From the NCBI RefSeq assembly GCF_001194135.2, contig NC_068981.1, forward strand, positions 108,856,011-108,888,578: a stretch of 32,568 nucleotides of DNA, written 5' to 3'. Position numbers and translations under genes: made by a program. Origin of the DNA: Octopus bimaculoides. Its lineage: Eukaryota. Under the pieces are notes generated by a model that worked only from the letters and a program-made list of their open reading frames with translations, did no database searches and had not been told where the DNA came from. Positions 1-29,200 of this stretch are shown piece by piece (the stretch's first letter is position 1; every line of letters starts with the position of its first letter).

Positions 1-138
1 CACACACACACATACATGACAGTTGATTTTTGCTAATGAAATAGCCAAGCAAGTCTTTCTTTAATTCTTTAATTTCTCCTTTTCCTTCTCTCTCTCTCTC
101 TCTCTCTCTCCACAACACAAATTAGCGACTCGGAACTG

Positions 139-1049
139 GTACGTTATTTTGATTCTTCTTGCTTTCATCTTTCTAATTCCGTTCTTTTTTTTTTTCTTGT
201 TTATTTTGTGTTAGACTTTTATTTTATTTCTAATTCTTTTCCAACCCTTCTATTATTTCTACCCCCTCTGCTAATCCCCAACAACCACCCACTACCACAC
301 GCGGCATCACCAACTGCAGACGCTGATGTGGTCACCATATACAGACTTAACAACGCTCTTGTCTGCCTCACATATTACAACCATCTCGCACATTCTTCAC
401 ATACTGATATAGTAGCACCTTTAGTTCTCAGTGAGAGAGAATCAGTCAGTTAGAGATGAAGACAGACGAGCAGAGACCAAAGCAGGAAGTGAGGTGGTAA
501 GGCGGAGAGGAAGATTAGATGTAAAAGAGAAAGTGGGAGAGAGAGAAATACACCCACAAACACATACATTACCGCCCTTATACATGCGCACTCACAACGC
601 GTACTCACACGCGCAGTCACAAATAATTAAAGGAAAGAGGATGAAAAACAAATAGTACAAGCTTGCTATCAACAAATGAGCAACTTCAGTTTTGCAGTAA
701 ACTTGACTGGCAACATTCTCCGTTGTAGTTGCTTTATCAAGATCAGTGTAGGGAACTTATTACACTGACAGGATATGGTATTGTACTAAGCGTATATATT
801 TATACACCTCATCAGTATAGCTGCCATTTAATATTTATATTCTGCAATGAACACATGTCTCTTCAGTCAAAGAGATAGCATATCAGAATATATATACTCT
901 TCATGAACATTTTAATGACATTTCAACTGAAAAAATATCATAGATTTTGTTACAAAATATACATTTATTTCTATATTTATCTACCAATTCATATATTTAT
1001 ACAGACAAATACTTGTATTCATTTCTCGCACATTGCAATTTATTTGCAG
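139..1049 (+). other. Candidate 5'-UTR intron of the GPCR gene
   Basis: Donor-like CTG|GTACGT at 136-144 and acceptor-like pyrimidine-rich ...ATTTATTTGCAG|G ending at 1049. Motif match only, no transcript data. Confidence 0.3.
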
Positions 1050-1502
1050 GAAACGAAGGAAGATTATTCAACGGTGGAAATTAATATTTTCTGAAGTCTG
1101 AAAACTTTACACAGGACAACTATTCGTGTTACCATTCGAGATATTGGAAGTGACACTACATGAAATGAATTCTAAAGAACTATTACTAAACGAAATATGT
1201 TGAAATATTTTGAACAACTCAGACAACCTTCGATTTCTTTCCTTTTGTTATGCTTTTGTCTTTGACTCTAAAACAGGACGGTACTTCTTTGGATTTTACC
1301 TGGAATGATTAGAAAACTCAGAGACAAGCCTTGTGAGCTGTCATCAAGCGGAGGTTTTCAGTTTAAACACTCTGTTTTGATTTGTTTTTGTTTTCATGTG
1401 TCCATGAATGTGTGAATTAATTTTTGCACTATTTTTGACTTTCCAATTCTATTTTAAATTGCATATATTTTATTTTGAGCTTTCATACTTATTTTACAAA
1501 AC

Positions 1503-3101
1503 ATGGAAAATGTTTCCAAAGATATTTTGATGGGACCATCTCCTGTCGGTGGAGATAGCGGGGAGTTTTGGAAATATCTAAAAGTATTACCAGTCATTAC
1601 TCTAACTTTAATTACACTTATTGGTAACGGACTGGTCACTATAATGTTTATTCGCTACAAACAACTTCGGAAATGTAAGAACATTTTCATTGTCAGCCTT
1701 GCATTTGCTGACTTTCTCATTGGATGTACGATGCCTGTTTACATACTTGAAGAACTAGGAGGAAGATTATGGTCAATACAAGGGCCTTTCTGCAGGGTGT
1801 TCCTCATGTTTCGATATTCATTGTTCTATATCTCTCTTCTTAGTATTATGCTGATATCTGTAGATCGATGGTGGTCTATAAACCACCCATTTTCCTATCG
1901 AGTCCGTCAAAGCAGAAAACTTGCCCTCTGGTCTGTTTTGCTGAGCTGGGGACTTAGCTTTGCTATTTATGCTCCACCAACACTTGGATGGAATGATGTC
2001 GACCATAGTAAAAACCAAGTAGTTGTCACACCAAAAACATTGTTTTCTATATTATCATCTACCGTTGGACCAATTGCTTCTGAAACTACACCTTCACAAC
2101 CTGTAATCTCCATTGACAGCACCCAAGTGACTTGCCATGCCCCATTTGAAAATAATCTAATCTTCATTGCGTTGACTTCTATTATCTTATATTTGCTACC
2201 GTTACTAGCTTTGTGGATAATTAACGCTAGTATTTATTTTAAGATTAGTCAGCGGAAAGGAATGAAAATTCGACGATCTCTAAGCACATCGGACACTTTC
2301 TTTCTCAATTACCGAAAATCATCCTCAGAATCGGATACTATGGGACAGCTGGAAGAGTTTCTTGACAACATGTTACCAAATATTCATCGGAAAGGAAGCA
2401 ATGTTGGTGGTATGTTAATATGTGATGAAAAAAGAAACTCTTTCGTGGGTCCTTTATCAACGAGACGAAATCCCCTAAGTCACTATGTATCGAATACCTC
2501 AGCATTCGCACAATATGCTCGAATCATTCAACATAAGAGACATGTCTCTTTCGATGCTACTGGAATGATGATGCCTGTTACAAAACAGAAGCGATACTCT
2601 ATTATTGGGTTAACCAAGGGTGGAAGCACCAGTAGTAATAGCAGCAGCAGCAGTAGCGGTTCCTCCAGCTCCGGTAGCCGTAGTGGTTTGGCTCTGCGCC
2701 GTCAAAGTGATGATTTGGTTAAAGACATGTTCGTCAAACAGGACAAGAAAGCTGCCTGCTCGCTGGGCTTTCTTGTGCTAGTTTTCACACTTTGTTGGAC
2801 ACCATACACCGTGTGCAGCATTCTGAGATCTGCCTACGGGAGTTGGTATATACCGTCTCTTGCTATGACAATAAGTTATTGGGTTCTCGCCACCAACTCT
2901 GCCATCAATCCTTTCCTTTATGGCCTCTGCAACAGTGACTTCCGTAAAGCATTTAGGTCTTGGTGTAAAAATCGAAACTCCAAACAAAGACGCTTCGAAG
3001 AAGCTCTTCTTTATTATGGTATCCCACAAAATAATGAACCGGAAGTAATACATGAACAAACTTCTTCGACTCCGTCCCGGGATTCCCGCAAAATTCCTTG
3101 A
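1503..3101 (+). CDS. Intronless class A (rhodopsin-like) GPCR, 532 aa, histamine H3/muscarinic-like scaffold with non-canonical binding pocket (orphan)
   Basis: Seven hydrophobic segments with GN (TM1), LAFAD (TM2), C3.25 (C97), DRW (R122=3.50), W4.50 (W149), ECL2 Cys C211, P5.50 (P233), D6.30, CWTPY (TM6), NPFLY (TM7) and helix 8 FRKAF. H3-like strings: NASIYFKISQR, QDKKAACSL, YWVLATNSAINPFLYGLC. Good start context aaacATGG and an N-terminal NVS sequon. Confidence 0.95.
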   Translation: MENVSKDILMGPSPVGGDSGEFWKYLKVLPVITLTLITLIGNGLVTIMFIRYKQLRKCKNIFIVSLAFADFLIGCTMPVYILEELGGRLWSIQGPFCRVFLMFRYSLFYISLLSIMLISVDRWWSINHPFSYRVRQSRKLALWSVLLSWGLSFAIYAPPTLGWNDVDHSKNQVVVTPKTLFSILSSTVGPIASETTPSQPVISIDSTQVTCHAPFENNLIFIALTSIILYLLPLLALWIINASIYFKISQRKGMKIRRSLSTSDTFFLNYRKSSSESDTMGQLEEFLDNMLPNIHRKGSNVGGMLICDEKRNSFVGPLSTRRNPLSHYVSNTSAFAQYARIIQHKRHVSFDATGMMMPVTKQKRYSIIGLTKGGSTSSNSSSSSSGSSSSGSRSGLALRRQSDDLVKDMFVKQDKKAACSLGFLVLVFTLCWTPYTVCSILRSAYGSWYIPSLAMTISYWVLATNSAINPFLYGLCNSDFRKAFRSWCKNRNSKQRRFEEALLYYGIPQNNEPEVIHEQTSSTPSRDSRKIP

Positions 3102-3343
3102 GTGATTAAAAAAAAGATAACAAGGAGGGAAACATTTCTAAGCGCAAACAATTTCTTACGGTTAGAGTTTAGGTGAGGTCATCCATCGCAGTAATATGGG
3201 ACAGATCCTTTATTTAAATCGACCGAAAACCGCGAAGATATTGTTTGAAAATTCAATCTAAGAAATCAAATGAGCACTGTGACTGAAGCAAATAGAATTC
3301 CTACATGCATTTTAAGAATTAAAATCAACGGATGTGCAAGAAG

Positions 3344-3415
3344 AATAAAAAGAGATGAGGCCCAAATATCATTGAAGTTTGGCATATACTTGTTAACTAT
3401 ATTTGGACAAATAAA
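3344..3415 (+). terminator. Candidate polyadenylation signals of the GPCR mRNA
   Basis: AATAAA at 3344-3349 and 3410-3415, followed by a T/GT-rich tract at about 3510-3570. AATAAA is common by chance in AT-rich DNA. Confidence 0.3.
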
Positions 3416-4887
3416 ACTACCAAAATGGGAACAAATCTGTTATCAACAGACACCATGTGCATTCTGGAACCATTAACCAAAAGAAATTAACTGACTCTAA
3501 AAAACAAAACTCTTTTTGTTTTGTTTTTGTTTATGTTTCGTATTCTTGTATTTTTCTTAACTTTTTCCTTTGTTATTGAAGAAAATCAAACTTTATATGA
3601 ATGATTTTTTTCAAGTATGAATGGACAGTCCGATTTTCATCCCCATTAACATCACTACAATTAACATTATTATATTGTTGTTGTTATAAACATTTTTATA
3701 CTGTCATGTTTATCACACTATCATAACTATCGTCTTCATTATCGCGGAAAAGCCGACATCATTTCCATCATTCTCAATATTTATAGGCTTCTACTACTTT
3801 TGAAATTTTATTTATATATCTAAGCATTTTACTCATATATTACCTTCGCTTATGACGTCAGATGAGTTGTTGTCAATGTACTAAATATAGATTATATTCA
3901 ATCTGGATGTCATTCCCGTGCGACAAAGTCAGAAACCACGCATAAACGTGAAGTACACTTTTTTTTTTAAGCCTACACATAATCAATCTCATTAAGTCAC
4001 GCAGTGATACATTTATGCCCGCCTGACACGTGCATAGACATATACACTACAGCTAGAGACACCCACACACAAATGAACATGTGTGTGTGTATGCATGTAC
4101 GAATGTATGTGTACATGTATGTGTATGTATGTATGTACATACATATATATACTTATACATATGTATGTATAATAACTACATAAAATATATATGATACACA
4201 TAATGTATATAATATATATGTGTATATATACGTATATACATACAAAGACACGCATGCATATTGTTAATTGACTGATTGTGCTGAAAATATACAAGTACTG
4301 GTGAGGAGAAAACTGGCAGACGACTTATTATTGTTATTATTATTATTGTATTATTATTACCCCCACTCCCAAGAAAAAATGAATTCATATGAACACTTAT
4401 TAATTAAATCTACGCCATTGAACCCATATAATTGTTACAGTGAAAATACAATGCCTTTTTTTTTCGCAATATAAAATCAATATAATATGCATGTGATTAA
4501 TTTGTTGTCACCCAGCGTATGTCAATGAAGACGCAACATAAATATTCTTAATAGGGAGAAATGCTGTAAGTATTCTAACTCCCAATTGTTAATCTAATAA
4601 TTATTTGTCTCTGTGAAGTATTTATTGATACATGCTGTAGATTATTCCCCGGTAAATACATTACTAAACGAATCGGCAGCTTAGTTTAGTTTGCCTGTTA
4701 AAACATATTTTAACCAAAATTGTTTAATAGATTTTTCAAAAGGCAAAACACACCTATTTCCAGTTTCTCTCCACATCAATGTCCATATTTATAACTGAAA
4801 AAGATATCTTTATTTATTTAAGTAAAATCATGGACATATTCGAGACGGTAGGGAGAGATTTTGAATTTAGTCCAGTACCAGATCAAA

Positions 4888-4890
4888 AAC

Positions 4891-4952
<62 letters not shown>

Positions 4953-4968
4953 TAATAATAATAACAAT

Positions 4969-5022
<54 letters not shown>

Positions 5023-5033
5023 TATTATTATTA
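4888..5033. repeat. Compound trinucleotide microsatellite (AAT)n-(CAT)n-(TAT)n
   Basis: Directly visible; gives the poly-N/H/Y pseudo-ORF 4861-5256. Confidence 0.97.
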
Positions 5034-5170
5034 TAACGCAGGCAATATTTATATCATGTATATCGTAAGGAACAAATTGAAACGAGATTTCTTATTTACA
5101 TGCTGTTATGCTGGTATATATGTGCATGTGAGTGTGTACGGAAAGAGAAGACAAATGGTAATAAAACAGA

Positions 5171-5171
5171 A

Positions 5172-5212
<41 letters not shown>

Positions 5213-5217
5213 AAGAA

Positions 5218-5252
<35 letters not shown>
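5171..5252. repeat. (AG)n microsatellite
   Basis: Directly visible, with a few AAAG interruptions. Confidence 0.95.
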
Positions 5253-5384
5253 TTAAAATTGTTGTTGGTCTTTCGTTGAATATAGTGTCGACAAATTGAT
5301 TAAAATATATACTTATAAATCCTAAGTATGTTTCTATAGTTGTAGATCCTAGTACGGGAAACAAACAGATGTATTACGAATGCA

Positions 5385-5539
5385 TGTGCGTGTGTGTATA
5401 CATACAAGAAAACACACACACACACATACACATATATACATATATATATGTATCTATGTATTTATGTGTGTGTGTGTGTATATATATACGCACATACGCG
5501 CGCACACACTCTTTCTCTTTCTTTCTCTCTCACACACAT

Positions 5540-5590
<51 letters not shown>

Positions 5591-5774
5591 NNNNNNNNNN
5601 NNNNNNNNNNNNNNNNNNNNNNNNNNNNNNNNNNNNNNNNNNNNNNNNNNNNNNNNNNNNNNNNNNNNNNNNNNNNNNNNNNNNNNNNNNNNNNNNNNNN
5701 NNNNNNNNNNNNNNNNNNNNNNNNNNNNNNNNNNNNNNNNNNNNNNNNNNNNNNNNNNNNNNNNNNNNNNNNNN
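5385..5774. repeat. Compound (TG)/(CA)/(TA) microsatellite running into an assembly gap (N 5591-5774)
   Basis: Directly visible. Confidence 0.95.
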
Positions 5775-6093
5775 ATAAACTATAAACACTTTCTCGTACA
5801 CACACACACACTCTCGCACAACTACTAATGTATTGTATACAAATGATTGGTGTGTTAGTTCATATTAATGGTGTGGAAGTTATCACATTAAACACAGAAT
5901 TAGCAGTCTTAATAAGAAGCTATAACAATATCGATGAGTTCTCCCTGCCAGTTAACTTGCTCCACTAACCATAGTTTTGTTTCTAGATCTACCAACATAA
6001 CTAGCGCAAGCATCTCCGCTGCCACCATCACCTACAACAGCATTCTTAGGTTTGGTAATACCAAACCTAAGCCACCACTAGAACTATTATAAA

Positions 6094-6296
6094 GCGGCGA
6101 GTCGGCACAATCATTTGTACGGCGGGCAAAATGCTTAAAGATATCTCATCTGTCTTCGTGTTCTGAGTTCAAATTCTGAGAGGTCGACTTTGCCTTTCAT
6201 CCTTTTGGAGTCGATAAAATAAATACCATTTGAGCACTGGAGTCGATGTATCCCTCCATCAAAATTGCTGGCCTTGTGCAAAAATTTGAAACCAAT
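6094..6296 (+). mobile_element. tRNA-derived SINE family B (Meta-domain-like), near full-length diverged copy
   Basis: Head GCGGCGAGTCGGCACAATC, B-box-like GAGTTCAAAT, core GAGGTCGACTTTGCCTTTCATCCTTTTGGAGTCGATAAAATAAATACCA repeated at several places in this window. The core resembles my recollection of the MetaSINE domain. Confidence 0.8.
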
Positions 6297-6360
6297 ATGT
6301 ATTTATTACGCATGATCCAATAGAGAGACATACGAAAGACGTCCTATCCTGATTTGACAT

Positions 6361-6480
6361 CCTGCCGAGGTCAACTTTGCCCTTCCTCTTTTCGCGGTCG
6401 ATAAAATAAGTACCAGCCAAGTACTAGGGTCTGTGCAATCGACTAGCCCTGTTTTCCAAAATCTCAATCCTTTTGAAAGA
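6361..6480 (+). mobile_element. SINE family B, 5'-truncated copy
   Basis: GCCGAGGTCAACTTTGCCCTTCCTCTTTTCGCGGTCGATAAAATAAGTACCAG matches the core of the 6094 copy; a (TTG)n tract follows. Confidence 0.75.
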
Positions 6481-6584
6481 ACGATTGTTGTTGCTGGTTT
6501 TATTGTTGTTTTGTTGTTCATGCTGTTGTTGTTGTTGCTGTAATTGTTATTGTTGAAGTCGTTACTGTGTTTATTGTTGTATAT

Positions 6585-6656
6585 AGTGGATTGGCAGAAT
6601 CGTTAGAGCGTCGGACAAAATGTCTTAGGTATTTATTCCGGTTTTTTACCTTCTGA
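6585..6656 (+). mobile_element. SINE family B, head fragment
   Basis: TTGGCAGAATCGTTAGAGCGTCGGACAAAATG...TTCTGA matches the heads of the other copies. Confidence 0.6.
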
Positions 6657-6713
6657 TAAGTGGTCCTGTTGTCAAAAGATAACGTCCAGTCAGTAAATTT
6701 CTCTCTGATGTAT

Positions 6714-6890
6714 TGTTGTTTAGCTCAAGGTCAATCCTGATCAAGGAAACCCATAATCAAAACCACTCAAGCTGAGACTATCCCGTTTTTTTCATTATAA
6801 GACATAGTGTATCTAGGTCAATATTATCCCATGTGTATTTCCTAGGGATAGTTGACTGTTATTTCAAACAGATCGAGCGATAACGTTAGC
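6714..6890 (+). repeat. Unclassified interspersed repeat (family C)
   Basis: Diverged similarity to the reverse complement of 25321-25484 (TTTAG..CAAGTCA.C.CT, ATCCC, TTATCC, TATTTC segments). Eye alignment only. Confidence 0.45.
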
Positions 6891-8703
6891 TCTCTCGTTG
6901 TCTCATTAAAGTTTTGTTATCGGTTGTTTCGTGCCCCAAATTCCAAATCCCTTTCAATATTATTTATGCCACCTTATTTGAGGCAATGAGCAACAAATAG
7001 ATATATACGGTCCTCTACAAGAATTGATTCTCAATTTTAGCACTAGATCTCGGAACTAAGAAAAGAATCATTAAACTGCATTAAAGCATTTCTATATTTA
7101 TCCATATTTTTGCTATTTTATATGCACACATTCACATGTGTATATGTATATATATATATATGTGCATGTATATATGTATGTGTGTATAGAGAGAGAGAGA
7201 GAGAAAGAGAGAAATAGACAGATACATACATACATACATAACCTATCTCTACTGTTCTGTTTATATTTGTCATACTTAAACTAGAATGTATTTGAAATGC
7301 GTTAAATGAACAGACATGAGCAAGATCTGACTAACTTACATAAGTTTGAAATTTATCAGATGTAACATGGTGACTTAACAAATTCATATGATTAAAAAAA
7401 CATTCAATAAGTATTTTAGCTATTTCAAAGCCAAATTTTCTTAATTATCTTTGAAAGAAATCAAAATAGAATGCAATAGAAAGTAATCTAAGAAATCTAA
7501 AGTTCCTTATTTCACTATAAAAGTACTTATATTCATACTTTTCTTTTCTCTCTCTATCTTTTTCTCATTGACACGCCCTCTCTCTCTTTCTCTTTCTCTC
7601 TCTCTCTTTCTCTCTCTCTCTCCCTCTTTCTCTCTCTCATATTTCATTATAGCTGTAGACTGATGTTGCATATATGCCGTAAATATATTTAATGTATTCT
7701 AATAATGTACAGAGTGAGTTGAAACTTCGATTGGGTTTTGAACCTTACAAAATGCTATTTAACTTCACTGTAGTCGCTAAAGCTCTTGTAAAAAAAACCT
7801 GAGCGCCACAATATCTTTCTCCTTCTTACAAATCAGTCTTTTTAAAAAATTTTCTCAAACTCCCAAGGCTATCGATACAATCAATATATTTACCAGTTGT
7901 TGCTAATGCCATAATGGAAGGTTCAACAGCCTCGTTTATATTCCTAGTGGAAGACTTGGCTTCATTTACATGTATCACCTGAGGGCAAGGCATATATACT
8001 CAACAAAATCTATTTCATTCGGTGTGATTTCTGACTTTCTGTCTATCTAGGAAACAAAGACATTTTATAAAAGTATTTTTCCAATACGTTTCTCCATTTT
8101 CTTTGTTTATACTGTTTTGTATATATTCTGTCGTCTCAATTTGCTTACCGTTTATAGGTATATTGGTAATTCTAATATATGTAATTCCAATCGAGGTGTT
8201 CTATTTGGGATCAAGTTTGAGCTAAGTTTACCGTTAAATGCAGTTAGTGTCAGAGTTCTGTGTAAAATCAAGAACACAAACTGAACAGCAACAATTCTGT
8301 TATTCCTACTTGACCTCTACTAAAACTTGTTACGTTTTAAACGTTTATGTTTGTTTAAACGTATATGTACTTTTTAAGCTCATATCTATATCTAACATGC
8401 ATATGTGAGTATCCATATAATTACGTACGTATAAAAGCATGACATAAATATCCTAATGACAAAAATAAAAGCAAACAAGTGAACCACCAGAAGAAAATGT
8501 AAAAAGTAAAGCAATTAACTGCAACACCAACAATAACAACAATAACAACAACAAACAATAAGAATAAGGTTCATTTCATTGGGTACAGTTGTAATTTAAT
8601 AATAGCAACAATTATTGCACCAGCAACACAGTAGTAACATTGTTTAGTTACGTCCATTTAAGATCTGAGTTGAAAACTCCTCAACTTTGCCTTTTATTAA
8701 TAC

Positions 8704-8740
8704 CATCATCATTGTCATCATGATCATGATCATCATCATT

Positions 8741-8823
<83 letters not shown>
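8704..8823. repeat. (CAT)n microsatellite
   Basis: Directly visible; source of the poly-M and poly-I ORFs. Confidence 0.97.
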
Positions 8824-9044
8824 TAATTTCGCCGTCGTCAACATCATTTTTGTAACGCACGCTGTGATGTTCTATATATCCTGTGCATAAACCATCCGCA
8901 AACTATCTTGAAACTGTCCTAAGAAAAAAACAGTAGATAATGCTCTTGAGAATTTAATAAACTTCACAGCCTCCGTTGCCACTCTCCCAAGAAATATTAA
9001 GCCTTATGTCCACAACCTTTATTATATACTTTTTTATTGATAGA

Positions 9045-9420
9045 GAGTGCATAGATTAGCAGAATTCTCAGTGGTATGTAGCTTTGTCTGTTCATACTTT
9101 GAAATCAAATCCCGCCAAGTCGACTTTACTCTTCAACCTGGATCGATAAAATATCTTCCAGAGGACATTAAGTCGGTGGTATTCTTTCTCCAAAGGTGTG
9201 ACTTTGTGATTGCGCATGTATACGAAATCATTATTTTCATAGATGGTAGAATCAGTAAAACACAAGATAAAATGTCTTGCAGTATTTAGTCACATCCATT
9301 TACCCCTGGAGTTCAAATTCTATCAGTCTCAATAGAATTTCAACTCTGTAGTCGATAAAATGTACTAATCGAATACCGTGGTCGATTAAGTCAACTATCT
9401 TAATAACTCCGAGTGTGTGG
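9045..9420 (+). mobile_element. Two highly degenerate SINE family B copies in tandem
   Basis: CCCGCCAAGTCGACTTTACTCTTCAACC..GATCGATAAAAT (about 9110-9150) and GAGTTCAAATTC...GTCGATAAAATGTACTAATC...GGTCGAT (about 9310-9390). Confidence 0.55.
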
Positions 9421-10923
9421 TCTTCTGCTAAGGTTATACATCATTGTTGTTATGAAGATCAGAATTGGCAATGTGTTTTTGCAAAAACGCCTTTTGATAT
9501 TAATTGCTTCCTTTTACGTTCAAAACTCGGCAGCATGATAAAATAAATTTTGGCATAGATTCATTCGGTTAGACTTTTGCCCCTGTAATGTCAATAATCA
9601 AAATCATACACTGTTATTTTTTTCCATTTCCACATTGTCTAAAATGATGATGACAATAATAATAATAATAATAATAATAGTTTCTTGCTGCCACGAGGTC
9701 GACACAACAAACACAACCAGCTCCTAAAACAAAATTATTTGCTTCAAAATTATTTACTTCAATTGCCTTCAACGAAGTCACTAAAATTTATATTAGCTTT
9801 CTGACAGAAAAGAAGAGGTAATCATAGATAATTATTTCAATATATGGAACGTTTAGTGGGTCTTTTTATGTTTTTTTTTAGACAGGATACGAACGTCTAA
9901 AAAGTAAGTGGCATTCTGTGATAAAAAAATTTCAATATGAGACTTATGAGAATTTCAATGACTTTGCAGGATATTGCATTCGGGCTGTCGTTTAACACAC
10001 AAATTTACTTACAAAAAAAAAAAAAGCAAAAATCTGGAAAAAGCAAAACGAGAGAAAATGTATACACTCACACACGCTCACATACACAGACACACCCAAA
10101 TATTTCCAAGATATTAATGTTTATTTTTGTACCATGTCAAATTATTCACATTGTATACCATTAAAATATGAATCCTGAAAAAGGATATGAATTAACTGGC
10201 TTGTTAAAGTGTTGTTACTTAAATTTTTTCTTATTTTGCTTTGTTGTTTAATGATAATGCGGTGCATGTTAAATAACCATTTCAGTAAAAGATAATGTTG
10301 CTACTGATATTGTAACTGTTGTTGCCTTATTACTAATATTATTACTACAGAGTTAATTGTTTGATAGTCTTGGTTATACAACAGGAGAAAACTCTTCCAT
10401 CTGCATTAATCTACTCCCGTCACTAATAACCATGTCTCGCATACAATAGGGGATTCGATCTATTGTAATTAAATAATAATTGCCGTTGTATGATAGATAT
10501 AAATACTTTGATTGGTTTGGATGTGAGGTGGAGGCTATACTGGTGGTGGCTCCCCAGCAGATCGTCTTAGATAGTCGAAGCTGATGGCAATCGATTCTTT
10601 TTTTTCAACTGCAGGAAAAAATATGGAAAGGTAGGGAATAACGTATGAAAGAATTAAAGAATAAAGGTAAGATTAAAATAATGGCATTTATTAGTGTTTC
10701 TCAGTTAGTATTGAAAAGACAAACTCCAATCGGATAATTATCGAAGAATAAAGAAAAATGAGTGAAGTGGTTGTTGTTATAGAAGACAAAGCAACAAAAT
10801 TAACAGAAATGATTCGTGCTTGCTAAATGATATCAACGCAAAGACTCAACCCAATGATTCATATGGAAGGTACTTGAATATATTTATAGGTTGTACAATT
10901 CAAAGATGTTATTTTCTTCAGTA

Positions 10924-24560: not shown

Positions 24561-24628
<68 letters not shown>
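24500..24628. repeat. Compound (CA)/(CATA)/(TA) microsatellite
   Basis: Directly visible; immediately precedes a SINE A head. Confidence 0.95.
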
Positions 24629-24629
<1 letters not shown>

Positions 24630-24631
<2 letters not shown>

Positions 24632-25002
24632 CCGGGATGTGGCTGTGTGGTAAGAAGATTACTTCGTAACCACATGGTTTTGTGTTCAGTCTCACAGTGT
24701 GGTACCTTGGGTAAGTGTCTTCTACACTCGGGCCAACCATAGAGTTGTGAGTGGCTTTAGTAGACGGAAACTGAAAGAAGCCCGTGGTATATATATATAT
24801 ATATATATGTGTGTACCACCGATTGACAACCCGTGTTGGTGTGTTTACTTCCTCGTAATTCAGCAGTTCGGCATAGGGCCGATAGAGTAAGTACTTGGCT
24901 TAGAAAAAATATATGTAATAGGGTCGATTCATTCGACTAAAAACTCTTCAAGGCGGTGCCCCAGCATGGCCGCAATCTAATGACTGCAACAAGTAAAAGA
25001 TA
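24630..25002 (+). mobile_element. SINE family A, complete older copy
   Basis: Head TGGCTGTGTGGTAAG, internal short (TA)/(TG) tract, body TTGACAACC..TGGTGTGTTTAC, 3' box GGCGGTGCCCCAGCATGGCCGCA..TGACTG.AACAAGTAAAAGA. Confidence 0.88.
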
Positions 25003-26789: not shown

Positions 26790-27626
26790 ATGCGTGTGTG
26801 TGTGTGTGCTGTTTGTGTGTATGTGTTTGTATATATGTATGCATGTATATATGCAAATATGCTTACATCTATATACGTATATATATATATATATATATNN
26901 NNNNNNNNNNNNNNNNNNNNNNNNNNNNNNNNNNNNNNNNNNNNNNNNNNNNNNNNNNNNNNNNNNNNNNNNNNNNNNNNNNNNNNNNNNNNNNNNNNNN
27001 NNNNNNNNNNNNNNNNNNNNNNNNNNNNNNNNNNNNNNNNNNNNNNNNNNNNNNNNNNNNNNNNNNNNNNNNNNNNNNNNNNNNNNNNNNNNNNNNNNNN
27101 NNNNNNNNNNNNNNNNNNNNNNNNNNNNNNNNNNNNNNNNNNNNNNNNNNNNNNNNNNNNNNNNNNNNNNNNNNNNNNNNNNNNNNNNNNNNNNNNNNNN
27201 NNNNNNNNNNNNNNNNNNNNNNNNNNNNNNNNNNNNNNNNNNNNNNNNNNNNNNNNNNNNNNNNNNNNNNNNNNNNNNNNNNNNNNNNNNNNNNNNNNNN
27301 NNNNNNNNNNNNNNNNNNNNNNNNNNNNNNNNNNNNNNNNNNNNNNNNNNNNNNNNNNNNNNNNNNNNNNNNNNNNNNNNNNNNNNNNNNNNNNNNNNNN
27401 NNNNNNNNNNNNNNNNNNNNNNNNNNNNNNNNNNNNNNNNNNNNNNNNNNNNNNNNNNNNNNNNNNNNNNNNNNNNNNNNNNNNNNNNNNNNNNNNNNNN
27501 NNNNNNNNNNNNNNNNNNNNNNNNNNNNNNNNNNNNNNNNNNNNNNNNNNNNNNNNNNNNNNNNNNNNNNNNNNNNNNNNNNNNNNNNNNNNNNNNNNNN
27601 NNNNNNNNNNNNNNNNNNNNNNNNNN

Positions 27627-28920: not shown

Positions 28921-29200
28921 CGAACATATATGTATATATATTGTATTATATATTGTATTATATATATTGTATTATATATAATAATGTACATATAATATTA
29001 TATGTATTNNNNNNNNNNAATACATATAATATTATATGTACATTATTATATATAATACAATATATATAATACAATATATATACATATATAATAATATATA
29101 ATATTATATATAATATAATATATATACATATATAATAATATATGATATTATATATACATATGATATAATATATACATAATTATAATACAATCTCTGATTG
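28921..29200. repeat. AT-rich low-complexity region with perfect inverted repeat around a 10-N gap (29009-29018)
   Basis: 28947-29008 is the exact reverse complement of 29019-29080. Confidence 0.9.

What the first reader, a model, noticed from the sequence alone, without database searches (positions are those of the whole stretch)
1791..2912. Aminergic-type GPCR with Arg at 3.32 and Ala at 7.43: charge-reversed pocket, candidate receptor for an anionic or non-amine ligand
Seen: counting from C97 (3.25) and R122 (3.50), position 3.32 is Arg104 (CGA, 1812-1814) in FRYSLF. Position 7.43 is Ala463 (GCC, 2889-2891) and 5.46 is Leu229, while T5.42/S5.43, W6.48, Y6.51 and W7.40 are kept. Established: Asp3.32 is the near-invariant counter-ion for the ligand amine in aminergic receptors, is H-bonded by Tyr/Trp7.43, and H3 uses Glu5.46 for histamine. 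Asp to CGA needs more than one base change, so a single sequencing error is unlikely. All activation motifs (DRW, D6.30, CWxP, NPxxY) are intact in an uninterrupted 532-codon ORF. Inference: a functional receptor whose amine-binding residues were replaced together, possibly to bind a carboxylate, sulfonate or phosphate ligand, or to act as a constitutive or peptide-sensing receptor. This may represent an uncharacterised cephalopod signalling system.
Basis: partly seen in the sequence, partly recalled or inferred. Interest (0 to 1): 0.85.

Follow-up and report, generated by a model that had tools for sequence, protein, structure and literature searches.

The report
Mollusc orphan receptor, arginine replacing amine-binding aspartate
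This octopus gene encodes an intact receptor from the histamine/acetylcholine receptor lineage in which the aspartate that normally binds the transmitter's amine is an arginine; the change is conserved across molluscs and under strong selection, so it is probably a working receptor for an unknown, probably non-amine, signal.

Summary
Window 1503-3101 (+) is one uninterrupted 532-codon ORF for a class A GPCR. Arg104 (CGA, 1812-1814) aligns with Asp114(3.32) of human histamine H3 receptor, Ala463 with Trp7.43 and Leu229 with Glu5.46. All activation motifs are intact.

It is not a cephalopod oddity or an error. The window is Octopus bimaculoides. The protein is 99% identical in O. vulgaris/O. sinensis and 89% in Argonauta, with dN/dS about 0.06. 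Orthologues occur in gastropods, bivalves and a chiton.

In that mollusc clade 3.32 is Arg in 32 of 34 sequences, encoded by CGA, CGG, CGT or AGG. Another cephalopod has Lys. The family (signature DRWWS) is monophyletic (100% bootstrap) and groups, with moderate support, beside H3-type receptors that keep Asp3.32/Glu5.46/Trp7.43.

Molluscs also keep such canonical H3-like paralogues, so this is a diverged paralogue. Loss of Trp7.43 and Trp3.28 and gain of Glu at the top of TM2 accompany the Arg; loss of Glu5.46 is cephalopod-specific.

The ligand is unknown. An anionic or zwitterionic small ligand anchored on Arg3.32 is my favoured reading but is untested. An internal salt bridge, as in GnRHR or CXCR1, is the main rival. 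I found no prior description. Interest is moderate.

The parts
1503..3101 (+). Complete single-exon coding sequence (532 codons plus stop) of the orphan class A GPCR
   Evidence: Same 532-aa model in O. vulgaris/O. sinensis (P0001) and Argonauta (P0002). ORF identical to O. bimaculoides GCA_001194135.2 CM046601.1.
1785..1883 (+). TM3 (aa 95-127), the most conserved helix; family signature R-x-S-L-L-Y-V-S-L-L-S...D-R-W-W-S
   Evidence: AF2 helix 95-127 with pLDDT 90-94; alignments.
1791..1793 (+). Cys97 (3.25), disulfide partner of Cys211 in ECL2 (2133-2135)
   Evidence: C97 and C211 nearly invariant.
1812..1814 (+). Arg104 (3.32), CGA; takes the place of the amine counter-ion Asp
   Evidence: R in 32/34 mollusc-clade sequences (entropy 0.38 bit) and D in 10/10 H3-like outgroup. 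Codons CGA/CGG/CGT/AGG, and Lys AAA in another cephalopod.
1749..1754 (+). Glu83-Glu84 at the extracellular end of TM2. E83 aligns with Tyr94 (2.64) of H3R and is a candidate counter-charge for Arg104.
   Evidence: E in 22/34 molluscs versus Y/W/F in the H3-like outgroup. Y94(2.64) lines the extended pocket of H3R (PMC9569329). Proximity to R104 is not measured.
1863..1871 (+). D121-R122-W123 (DRY-type motif; DRWWS in the family)
2187..2189 (+). Leu229 (5.46); Glu in H3/H4 receptors and in many non-cephalopod orthologues
2262..2690 (+). Long third intracellular loop (about aa 254-396), predicted disordered. It is flanked by conserved basic/Ser motifs: KIRRSLSTSD at aa 255-264 and RRQSDD just before TM6.
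   Evidence: pLDDT <50 for 259-282 and 289-393. (R257 R258 S259 S261 nearly invariant). The loop is under purifying selection, w=0.047.
2742..2744 (+). Asp414 (6.30), ionic-lock partner of R3.50
2793..2807 (+). C431-W432-T-P434-Y435 (CWxP toggle plus Y6.51)
2889..2891 (+). Ala463 (7.43), GCC. It is Trp/Tyr in canonical aminergic receptors and small or aliphatic throughout the mollusc clade.
2907..2921 (+). N469-P-F-L-Y473 (NPxxY)
279..718 (.). Conserved non-coding block 0.8-1.2 kb upstream of the ATG; candidate promoter or 5'-UTR exon of this gene (inferred)
   Evidence: 71% identity to Argonauta, where otherwise only the CDS aligns. Near-perfect cores and indels of 7/9/13/14 nt.

Best explanation
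SHOWN. The gene is the Octopus bimaculoides orthologue of an old orphan class A GPCR family under purifying selection. The family is found in cephalopods, gastropods, bivalves and a chiton. It is a paralogue of histamine-H3-type receptors, and molluscs also keep canonical D3.32/E5.46/W7.43 copies. At the base of the mollusc clade the amine counter-ion Asp3.32 became Arg (Lys in one cephalopod). The change came together with W/Y7.43 to a small residue, W3.28 to F/Y, and Tyr to Glu at the top of TM2. Every switch needed for G-protein activation is intact: D2.50, S3.39, DRW, D6.30, F6.44, CWxP, N7.45/S7.46 and NPxxY.

INFERRED. The receptor cannot bind a protonated amine through the classical 3.32 salt bridge. 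Arg3.32 is by far the most conserved pocket residue and is more conserved than any candidate internal partner. I therefore take it to be the primary ligand anchor. It would bind a carboxylate, sulfonate or phosphate group of a small anionic or zwitterionic (possibly lipid-like) ligand in the old orthosteric pocket. In the resting state it would be charge-balanced by E83/E84, and by E5.46 in non-cephalopods. Ligand binding at TM3 would then drive the usual W6.48/PIF/NPxxY rearrangement and G-protein coupling through the highly conserved ICL2 and ICL3 ends.

CONFIDENCE BY TIER.
- Functional conserved orphan that is not a canonical amine receptor: about 0.85.
- Arg3.32 contacts an acidic group of the ligand: about 0.4.
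For: Intact ORF and motifs.

Homology and fold. Best solved relatives are H3R (3e-37), then 5-HT7 and M5. Foldseek top hits are M2 and H3R, TM-score 0.83-0.85 on target length.

Selection. w=0.056 against O. vulgaris (dS 0.05) and 0.06 against Argonauta. TM core w=0.03.

Conservation of R3.32.
- R in 32/34 mollusc sequences, entropy 0.38 bit against a mean of 1.90 for the pocket positions listed.
- Four different Arg codons plus Lys AAA.
- All 100+ DRY/DRF-type outgroup hits keep D3.32.

Phylogeny. Family bootstrap 100, mollusc R clade 96-98, grouping with the H3-like cluster 63-87. The nearest outgroup's best PDB hit is H3R at 2.8e-81.

Paralogy. Canonical H3-like paralogues exist in Nucella, Gigantopelta and Pecten. 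Nucella and Owenia each carry both types.

Coupled pocket changes. R persists in 12 mollusc-clade sequences that lack E83, so its role is not only to pair with E83.

The octopod pocket is otherwise hydrophobic or aromatic (F3.28, L3.29, F3.36, Y3.37, L5.46, Y6.51, Y7.39, A7.43) with a second Arg at 6.58.
Against: No ligand, expression or signalling data exist here.

AF2 coordinates are not exposed by the tool, so the environment of R104 (distance to E83/E84, Y435, Y459) could not be measured.

Apart from R3.32 the extracellular half is less conserved than in H3-like receptors: 2.01 versus 1.55 bits, and pocket positions 1.90 versus 1.19. That fits lineage-specific ligands or ligand independence as well as it fits a shared small ligand.

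The precedents for cationic 3.32 in class A (GnRHR, CXCR1, NTSR1) are peptide receptors with an interhelical salt bridge, not small-anion sensors.

One land-snail paralogue lost the Arg (L3.32), and non-mollusc relatives have E, K, S or F.

The tree is neighbour-joining on a simple distance, and the sister relation to H3 is only moderately supported.
Confidence: 0.5

Rival explanations
1. Structural or tethered cation. Arg3.32 does not bind a ligand anion. It forms an interhelical salt bridge (with E83/E84 on TM2, or acids at 7.36/3.33 in other lineages) or sits in the aromatic cage where the ligand amine used to be. That shapes the pocket for a peptide or other neutral ligand, or gives a constitutively active, ligand-independent receptor.
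For: A family-specific Glu sits at the H3R-Y94(2.64) position: E in 22/34, and Y/W/F in the outgroup. Where it is missing, an acid is usually present at position 84, 7.36 or 3.33. The one mollusc sequence without Arg or Lys (P0066, L3.32) has also lost E83.

Aromatic residues at 3.28, 3.33, 3.37, 5.47, 6.48, 6.51 and 7.40 are largely kept.

Precedents are the GnRHR K3.32-D2.61 and CXCR1 K3.32-E7.39 salt bridges.

The intracellular half is more conserved than the extracellular half (1.49 versus 2.01 bits).
Against: R3.32 is more conserved than any proposed partner: 12 of the 34 mollusc-clade sequences lack Glu at E83, and 10 of those 12 keep Arg. Owenia has E83 together with E3.32, so E83 is not strictly tied to the Arg.

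The sodium-site residues (D2.50, S3.39, N7.45, S7.46) and the D6.30 ionic lock are intact. By established knowledge these are features of receptors that hold an inactive state.

The short N-terminus (about 25 aa) is more typical of small-molecule receptors than of peptide receptors (inference).
Confidence: 0.27
2. Non-canonical amine receptor. The family still senses histamine or another amine, or a polyamine. It would use Glu5.46 and/or the TM2 Glu as counter-ion, as teleost TAARs use Asp5.42 and schistosome SmGPR-1/2 respond to histamine with Asn3.32.
For: Descent from, or proximity to, the H3-type lineage. E5.46 is retained in 15/34 mollusc members and 4/5 basal members. Precedents for amine recognition without D3.32 are PMC4695389 (abstract) and PMC3289605.
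Against: Cephalopods have Leu at 5.46. A guanidinium in the centre of the pocket should repel a cationic head group (inference).

Molluscs keep separate canonical H3-like paralogues with D3.32/E5.46/W7.43. The amine-binding role is therefore already covered, and the R3.32 copy has diverged for more than a phylum's history.
Confidence: 0.15
3. The database names are right: it is a muscarinic M5-like or histamine H3 receptor.
For: Automated names of orthologues; best PDB sequence and fold hits are H3R and M2/M5.
Against: One orthogroup carries five different automated names: M5-like, M3-like, H3-like, tyramine Ser-2-like and 5-HT1A-like.

D3.32, Y/W7.43 and W3.28 are absent. N6.52 of muscarinic receptors is Thr. 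E5.46 of H3/H4 is Leu.

The family forms its own 100%-supported clade.
Confidence: 0.04
4. Artefact or decaying gene: assembly error, or a pseudogene drifting after loss of the ligand site.
For: None beyond the unusual residue.
Against: The residue is identical in four assemblies of three Octopus species, with a synonymous CGG in Argonauta. w is about 0.06, also in ICL3. There are no frameshifts or stops.
Confidence: 0.01

Closest known systems
Histamine H3/H4-type receptors (human H3R, PDB 7F61/8YUU; invertebrate H3-like receptors)
   Same: Best sequence match (3e-37) and among the best fold matches. Shared features are the long ICL3, CWxPY, W7.40 and the C3.25-ECL2 disulfide. Many non-cephalopod family members still carry Glu5.46. 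The family groups beside the H3-like cluster in NJ trees (63-87%)..
   Different: Asp3.32 is Arg. Trp7.43 is Ala (small throughout the clade). Trp3.28 is Phe/Tyr. Tyr2.64 is Glu. DRF/DRY is DRWW. Glu5.46 is Leu in cephalopods. Canonical H3-like paralogues coexist in molluscs.
Muscarinic acetylcholine receptors (the NCBI name of the O. vulgaris orthologue is 'M5-like')
   Same: Overall fold (M2 is the top Foldseek hit), long ICL3, Y3.33, Y6.51, Y7.39, T5.42.
   Different: Lacks D3.32, N6.52, Y7.43 and W4.57. It lies outside the muscarinic clades in the tree.
Schistosome SmGPR clade (SmGPR-1/-2, histamine-responsive, Asn3.32) and teleost clade III TAARs (Asp5.42 instead of Asp3.32)
   Same: Lineage-restricted amine-like GPCR clades that have lost the canonical Asp3.32 yet are functional (PMC3289605; PMC4695389).
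   Different: Those carry a neutral residue or a relocated acid and still bind amines. Here the residue is a conserved cation. No close sequence relationship to SmGPRs was seen; the only flatworm hit, P0215, is a D3.32 muscarinic-type receptor.
Class A receptors with a cationic 3.32: GnRH receptor (Lys3.32-Asp2.61), CXCR1/2 (Lys3.32-Glu7.39), NTSR1 (Arg3.32)
   Same: A Lys or Arg at 3.32 paired with an acid on TM2 or TM7 that shapes the pocket and is needed for agonist action (PMC5662886, PMC10425996). Here R104 has E83/E84 on TM2.
   Different: Those are peptide or chemokine receptors from unrelated class A branches. The resemblance is analogy, not homology, and pairing of R104 with E83 is not demonstrated.
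Carboxylate-sensing class A GPCRs (HCA2 Arg3.36, SUCNR1 Arg3.29/7.39, FFAR1 Arg5.39/7.35; own knowledge)
   Same: A buried Arg on TM3 in an otherwise hydrophobic or aromatic pocket, as a possible acid anchor.
   Different: Different positions and no sequence relationship. Function here is untested.

Membership tests
Class A (rhodopsin-like) GPCR, Pfam PF00001 | Seven TM helices and a significant 7tm_1 match | tested here: met
   7tm_1 E=9.8e-46, 156.8 bits against a cut-off of 30.5, covering aa 41-473. AF2 gives seven TM helices plus helix 8.
Class A (rhodopsin-like) GPCR, Pfam PF00001 | Reference residues and microswitches: N1.50, D2.50, [DE]R[YW], W4.50, P5.50, CWxP, NPxxY, C3.25-ECL2 disulfide | tested here: met
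   N42, D70, D121-R122-W123, W149, P233, C431-W-T-P434, N469-P-F-L-Y473, C97/C211.
Aminergic (biogenic amine / muscarinic) receptor group | Closest homology to aminergic receptors | tested here: met
   Top 60 PDB sequence hits are all aminergic or muscarinic. Foldseek top hits are M2, H3R, M3, M4 and beta1.
Aminergic (biogenic amine / muscarinic) receptor group | Asp3.32 counter-ion for the ligand amine | tested here: not met
   Arg104. R/K throughout the mollusc clade.
Aminergic (biogenic amine / muscarinic) receptor group | Trp/Tyr7.43 hydrogen-bonded to Asp3.32; Trp7.40 | tested here: inconclusive
   7.43 is Ala463 (not met). W7.40 is W460 (met).
Histamine H3/H4 receptors | Asp3.32 plus Glu5.46 pair that binds histamine | tested here: not met
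   R104 and L229. Glu5.46 is present in 15/34 orthologues from other mollusc classes, but always with Arg3.32.
Histamine H3/H4 receptors | Placement inside the H3/H4 clade | tested here: not met
   The family forms a separate 100%-supported clade beside, not within, the H3-like cluster. Canonical H3-like paralogues exist in molluscs.
Muscarinic acetylcholine receptors | Asp3.32, Asn6.52, and the Tyr lid (Y3.33, Y6.51, Y7.39) with Tyr7.43 | tested here: not met
   R104, T436 and A463. Only Y105, Y435 and Y459 are kept.
Mollusc 'DRWW / Arg3.32' orphan family (defined here) | DRWWS motif at the end of TM3, Arg/Lys3.32, small 7.43, KIRRSLSxSD after TM5, RKQSDD...QDKKAA before TM6, monophyly | tested here: met
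   All are present in the window protein. Clade support is 96-100%.
Carboxylate/anion-sensing GPCRs (functional class) | Activation by an acidic ligand that depends on the pocket Arg | not testable with these tools
   Needs heterologous expression and mutagenesis.

The most novel reading that the evidence does not exclude
A histamine-H3-type receptor was duplicated in early lophotrochozoans. In the mollusc stem lineage its counter-ion was inverted (Asp to Arg, possibly through Glu and Lys intermediates still seen in relatives). This would have created a phylum-wide receptor for an acidic or zwitterionic transmitter or metabolite. Candidates are imidazole-acetate, gamma-glutamyl-amine conjugates (the known route of histamine inactivation in Aplysia), taurine-type sulfonates, or a fatty acid. 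That would be a previously unrecognised small-molecule signalling system in molluscs, made by charge reversal of the aminergic pocket.
Probability: 0.3. Interest if true: 0.75.

Novelty: new variant of a known kind. Interest (0 to 1): 0.45.

Why it matters
Asp3.32 is the most dependable ligand-binding residue in aminergic GPCRs. A whole family that has kept the opposite charge there since before the mollusc classes diverged, next to canonical H3-like paralogues, is a natural experiment in how a transmitter pocket is repurposed.

It also gives a clean deorphanisation target: a single intronless ORF with one obvious residue to mutate. In addition it flags a systematic annotation error, because orthologues are variously called M5-, M3-, H3-, tyramine- or 5-HT1A-like. 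If the ligand proves to be an acidic metabolite, the family would add a new receptor-ligand class to mollusc and cephalopod neurobiology.

Tried and rejected
1. Sequencing error or pseudogene: rejected.

2. Cephalopod-specific novelty or gene expansion: rejected. Only one orthologue was found per cephalopod. Gastropods have two or three paralogues.

3. 'It is simply the mollusc H3 receptor': rejected, because canonical D3.32 H3-like paralogues coexist in Nucella, Gigantopelta and Pecten.

4. Relationship to schistosome SmGPRs: the only flatworm hit was an ordinary D3.32 muscarinic-type receptor.

5. A profile search with the basal, non-Arg clade (A2) returned almost nothing new. The taxa of P0028, P0064, P0069 and P0072 stay unknown.

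6. Pocket geometry. The structure tool returns no coordinates, so the R104-E83 distance could not be measured. A second prediction was not run for that reason.

7. Literature. Searches on orphan aminergic mollusc receptors, R/K3.32, H3-like or M5-like names and monoamine-receptor phylogenies found no description of this family. The library is incomplete, so this is not proof of novelty.

8. Expression. The exact octopus protein is found only on the genome record. Orthologues sit on short 1.8-1.9 kb contigs that may be transcripts, but that is not evidence for the octopus gene.

9. Other ORFs in the window (17560-18213, 19323-19772, and others) have no Pfam match.
Full report
1. WHAT IS IN THE SEQUENCE

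The window holds one long ORF at 1503..3101 on the + strand. It has 532 codons, an ATG start and an in-frame TGA 27 nt upstream. Pfam calls it a class A GPCR (7tm_1, E=1e-45, aa 41-473).

- C97 (1791-1793)
- R104 = CGA (1812-1814)
- D121-R-W123
- T225/S226
- L229
- D414
- C431-W-T-P434
- Y435
- W460
- A463 = GCC (2889-2891)
- N469-P-F-L-Y473

The Ballesteros-Weinstein assignments do not rest on counting alone. In the HMMER alignment to human histamine H3 receptor, the best solved relative at 3e-37, R104 lies opposite D114(3.32). L229 lies opposite E206(5.46) and A463 opposite W402(7.43). The H3R numbers were checked in the H3R structure paper PMC9569329.

An AlphaFold2 model built on 35 family sequences gives seven confident TM helices (pLDDT 85-95) plus helix 8. 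ECL2 (171-208) and ICL3 (259-393) are disordered. Its best structural matches are M2 muscarinic and H3 receptors, with TM-score 0.83-0.85 on target length.

2. REAL, SELECTED, AND NOT CONFINED TO CEPHALOPODS

The ORF is identical to Octopus bimaculoides GCA_001194135.2. O. vulgaris and O. sinensis encode a protein with three differences. Argonauta hians encodes one that is 89% identical.

Nei-Gojobori estimates:

| Comparison | dN | dS | dN/dS |
|---|---|---|---|
| O. vulgaris | 0.0028 | 0.050 | 0.056 |
| Argonauta, whole ORF | 0.059 | about 1.0 | 0.06 |
| Argonauta, TM core | 0.031 | 0.98 | 0.03 |
| Argonauta, ICL3 | 0.069 | 1.46 | 0.047 |

The Argonauta dS is near saturation, so that ratio is approximate.

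The Arg104 codon is CGA in Octopus and CGG in Argonauta. It is CGT and AGG in two other molluscs. In a further cephalopod contig it is Lys (AAA); there the gene is split by a probable long-read indel in TM5.

Homologue searches recover a tight orthogroup. Members come from Patella, Haliotis, Lottia, Batillaria, Nucella, Babylonia, Pomacea, Physella, Biomphalaria and Lymnaea. Others come from Bradybaena, Argopecten, Saccostrea, unionid mussels and the chiton Liolophura. E-values run from 1e-60 to 1e-111. After these the scores fall to the general aminergic background.

Across the orthogroup the automated names disagree: M5-like, M3-like, H3-like, tyramine Ser-2-like and 5-HT1A-like.

3. THE FAMILY AND ITS POCKET

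Every family member ends TM3 with DRW(W). The family lacks Asp3.32, apart from the annelid relative with Glu noted below. Every one of the >100 DRY/DRF-type hits in the exhaustive profile search keeps Asp3.32.

In the 34-sequence mollusc clade, 3.32 is Arg in 32, Lys in 1 and Leu in 1. That is an entropy of 0.38 bit, against a mean of 1.90 for the pocket positions listed.

Neighbour-joining trees give the following bootstrap support:

| Clade | Support (%) |
|---|---|
| Whole family | 100 |
| Mollusc Arg clade | 96-98 |
| Family plus H3-like cluster | 63-87 |

The H3-like cluster carries D3.32/E5.46/Y6.51/W7.43. It includes fish and newt H3, amphioxus HRH3/4, Saccoglossus, a rotifer and the annelid Owenia.

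Basal family members are the annelid Owenia P0065 (Glu3.32) and four sequences of unknown taxon with Lys, Phe or Ser at 3.32. These still have Trp/Tyr7.43 and Glu5.46.

Changes that map to the base of the mollusc clade:
- D3.32 to R
- W/Y7.43 to A/V/L/M
- W3.28 to F/Y
- S/T3.37 to Y/F
- Y4.57 to H (reverted to Tyr in octopods)
- Tyr to Glu at the position aligned with H3R Y94(2.64), which is E83 here (Glu in 22/34, Gln in 5)

Glu5.46 is ancestral. It is retained in 15/34 mollusc sequences and is Gln in 8. Its replacement by Leu is specific to cephalopods.

E (GAR), K (AAR) and R (AGR) are linked by single-base steps, and all three occur in the family. A stepwise Asp to Glu to Lys to Arg path is therefore plausible (inference).

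4. A PARALOGUE, NOT THE MOLLUSC H3 RECEPTOR

Canonical H3-like receptors with D3.32, E5.46, Y6.51 and W7.43 exist in Nucella lapillus, Gigantopelta aegis and Pecten maximus. Nucella has both kinds (P0009 and P0020 versus P0168). So does Owenia (P0065 versus P0081 and P0091). The duplication therefore predates the annelid-mollusc split. The Arg copy has been kept alongside an amine-competent copy, which argues for a distinct function.

5. HOW IT PROBABLY WORKS

Shown:
- The signalling machinery is intact: D2.50, S3.39, L3.40/P5.50/F6.44, DRW, D6.30, CWxP, N7.45/S7.46 and NPxxY.
- The intracellular face is the most conserved part. It includes ICL2 DRWWSIxxPFSYRVRQS, KIRRSLSxSD after TM5 and RKQSDD...QDKKAA before TM6.
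- Mean entropy of the intracellular half is 1.49 bit, against 2.01 for the extracellular half.

Inferred:
- The classical amine salt bridge is impossible.
- Arg3.32 is far better conserved than any other pocket residue.
- It is also better conserved than any possible internal partner. Of the 12 mollusc-clade sequences without Glu at E83, 10 keep the Arg.

I therefore favour a direct role in ligand recognition. The Arg would anchor an acidic group of a small anionic or zwitterionic, possibly lipid-like, ligand. E83/E84 (and E5.46 outside cephalopods) would balance the charge or bind a cationic part of the ligand. I put this at about 0.4.

The main rival (about 0.27) follows the only documented uses of Lys/Arg3.32 in class A. 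These are interhelical salt bridges that shape a peptide pocket or are needed for activation: GnRHR K3.32-D2.61 and CXCR1 K3.32-E7.39 (PMC5662886, PMC10425996).

In support of that rival:
- When E83 is absent, an acid is usually present at position 84, 7.36 or 3.33.
- The one mollusc sequence with neither Arg nor Lys at 3.32 has also lost E83.
- A guanidinium parked in the old amine cage could also make the receptor constitutively active.

Non-canonical amine binding through E5.46 or E2.64 is possible. Precedents are teleost TAARs and schistosome SmGPR-1/2 with Asn3.32. It is less likely (about 0.15), because cephalopods lack E5.46 and canonical paralogues persist. Being a true muscarinic or H3 receptor, or an artefact, is essentially excluded.

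6. LIMITS
- No functional or expression data could be obtained.
- Model coordinates are not exposed, so R104 contacts are unmeasured.
- Trees are distance-based.
- The taxa of four basal sequences are unknown.
- The literature library is incomplete.

Within these limits I found no paper describing this family.

7. VERDICT
A functional non-canonical receptor is supported; cephalopod specificity and a simple charge reversal are not.
- It is a new variant of a known kind: an unrecognised orphan subfamily of the aminergic/H3-like lineage, found across the mollusc classes sampled, with a conserved cationic 3.32.
- Interest is moderate (0.45). It is a good deorphanisation target and a neat case of pocket repurposing. 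However, orphan amine-like GPCRs without Asp3.32 are not unprecedented, and the anionic-ligand idea remains untested.

Noticed in passing
window 279-718: A conserved non-coding block lies 0.8-1.2 kb upstream of the GPCR start codon. It is 71% identical to Argonauta hians, where otherwise only the CDS is alignable. It has near-perfect cores, for example GGTCACCATATACAGACTTAACAACGCT, and indels that are not multiples of three. It is a candidate promoter or 5'-UTR exon.
   Followed up: partly
window 1-13663 versus L003 (O. vulgaris OX597814.1): The window is collinear with O. vulgaris at 86-94% identity. The window itself is O. bimaculoides chromosome record CM046601.1, around 108.85 Mb.
   Followed up: yes
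window 10922-11103, 16709-16901, 24587-24808: Three copies of a dispersed repeat of about 180-220 bp, two of them directly abutting N-gaps. All three hit the same two places upstream of the O. vulgaris gene (L003 about 2381-2545 and 2909-3148). Probably a SINE-like element that breaks the assembly.
   Followed up: no
window 17560-18213 (-) and 19323-19772 (-): ORFs of 217 and 149 aa that read like decayed retroelement protein fragments. Neither has a Pfam match.
   Followed up: partly
window 5591-5774, 11104-11242, 16902-17292, 21436-21601, 26899-27626, 29009-29018: Six assembly gaps (1618 N in all), each flanked by (TA/CA)n-type simple repeats. These repeats generate many spurious long 'ORFs'.
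   Followed up: no
L005 6001-7786 (ENA ERZ21867824 ctg117965l): In another cephalopod assembly of unknown species the orthologue is called as two overlapping genes (P0074 and P0003), because of a frameshift in TM5. This is probably a long-read indel error. It carries Lys (AAA) at 3.32 and Cys at 7.40.
   Followed up: partly
P0080, P0082, P0112 (unnamed ENA proteins): A very divergent sub-branch of the family has ERW instead of DRW, Arg3.32 directly followed by Asp/Glu3.33, and Glu7.36. The counter-charge appears to have moved to a different place.
   Followed up: no
window 2778-3059 (-): A 93-aa antisense ORF lies inside the GPCR coding region. Nothing marks it as more than a chance ORF.
   Followed up: no
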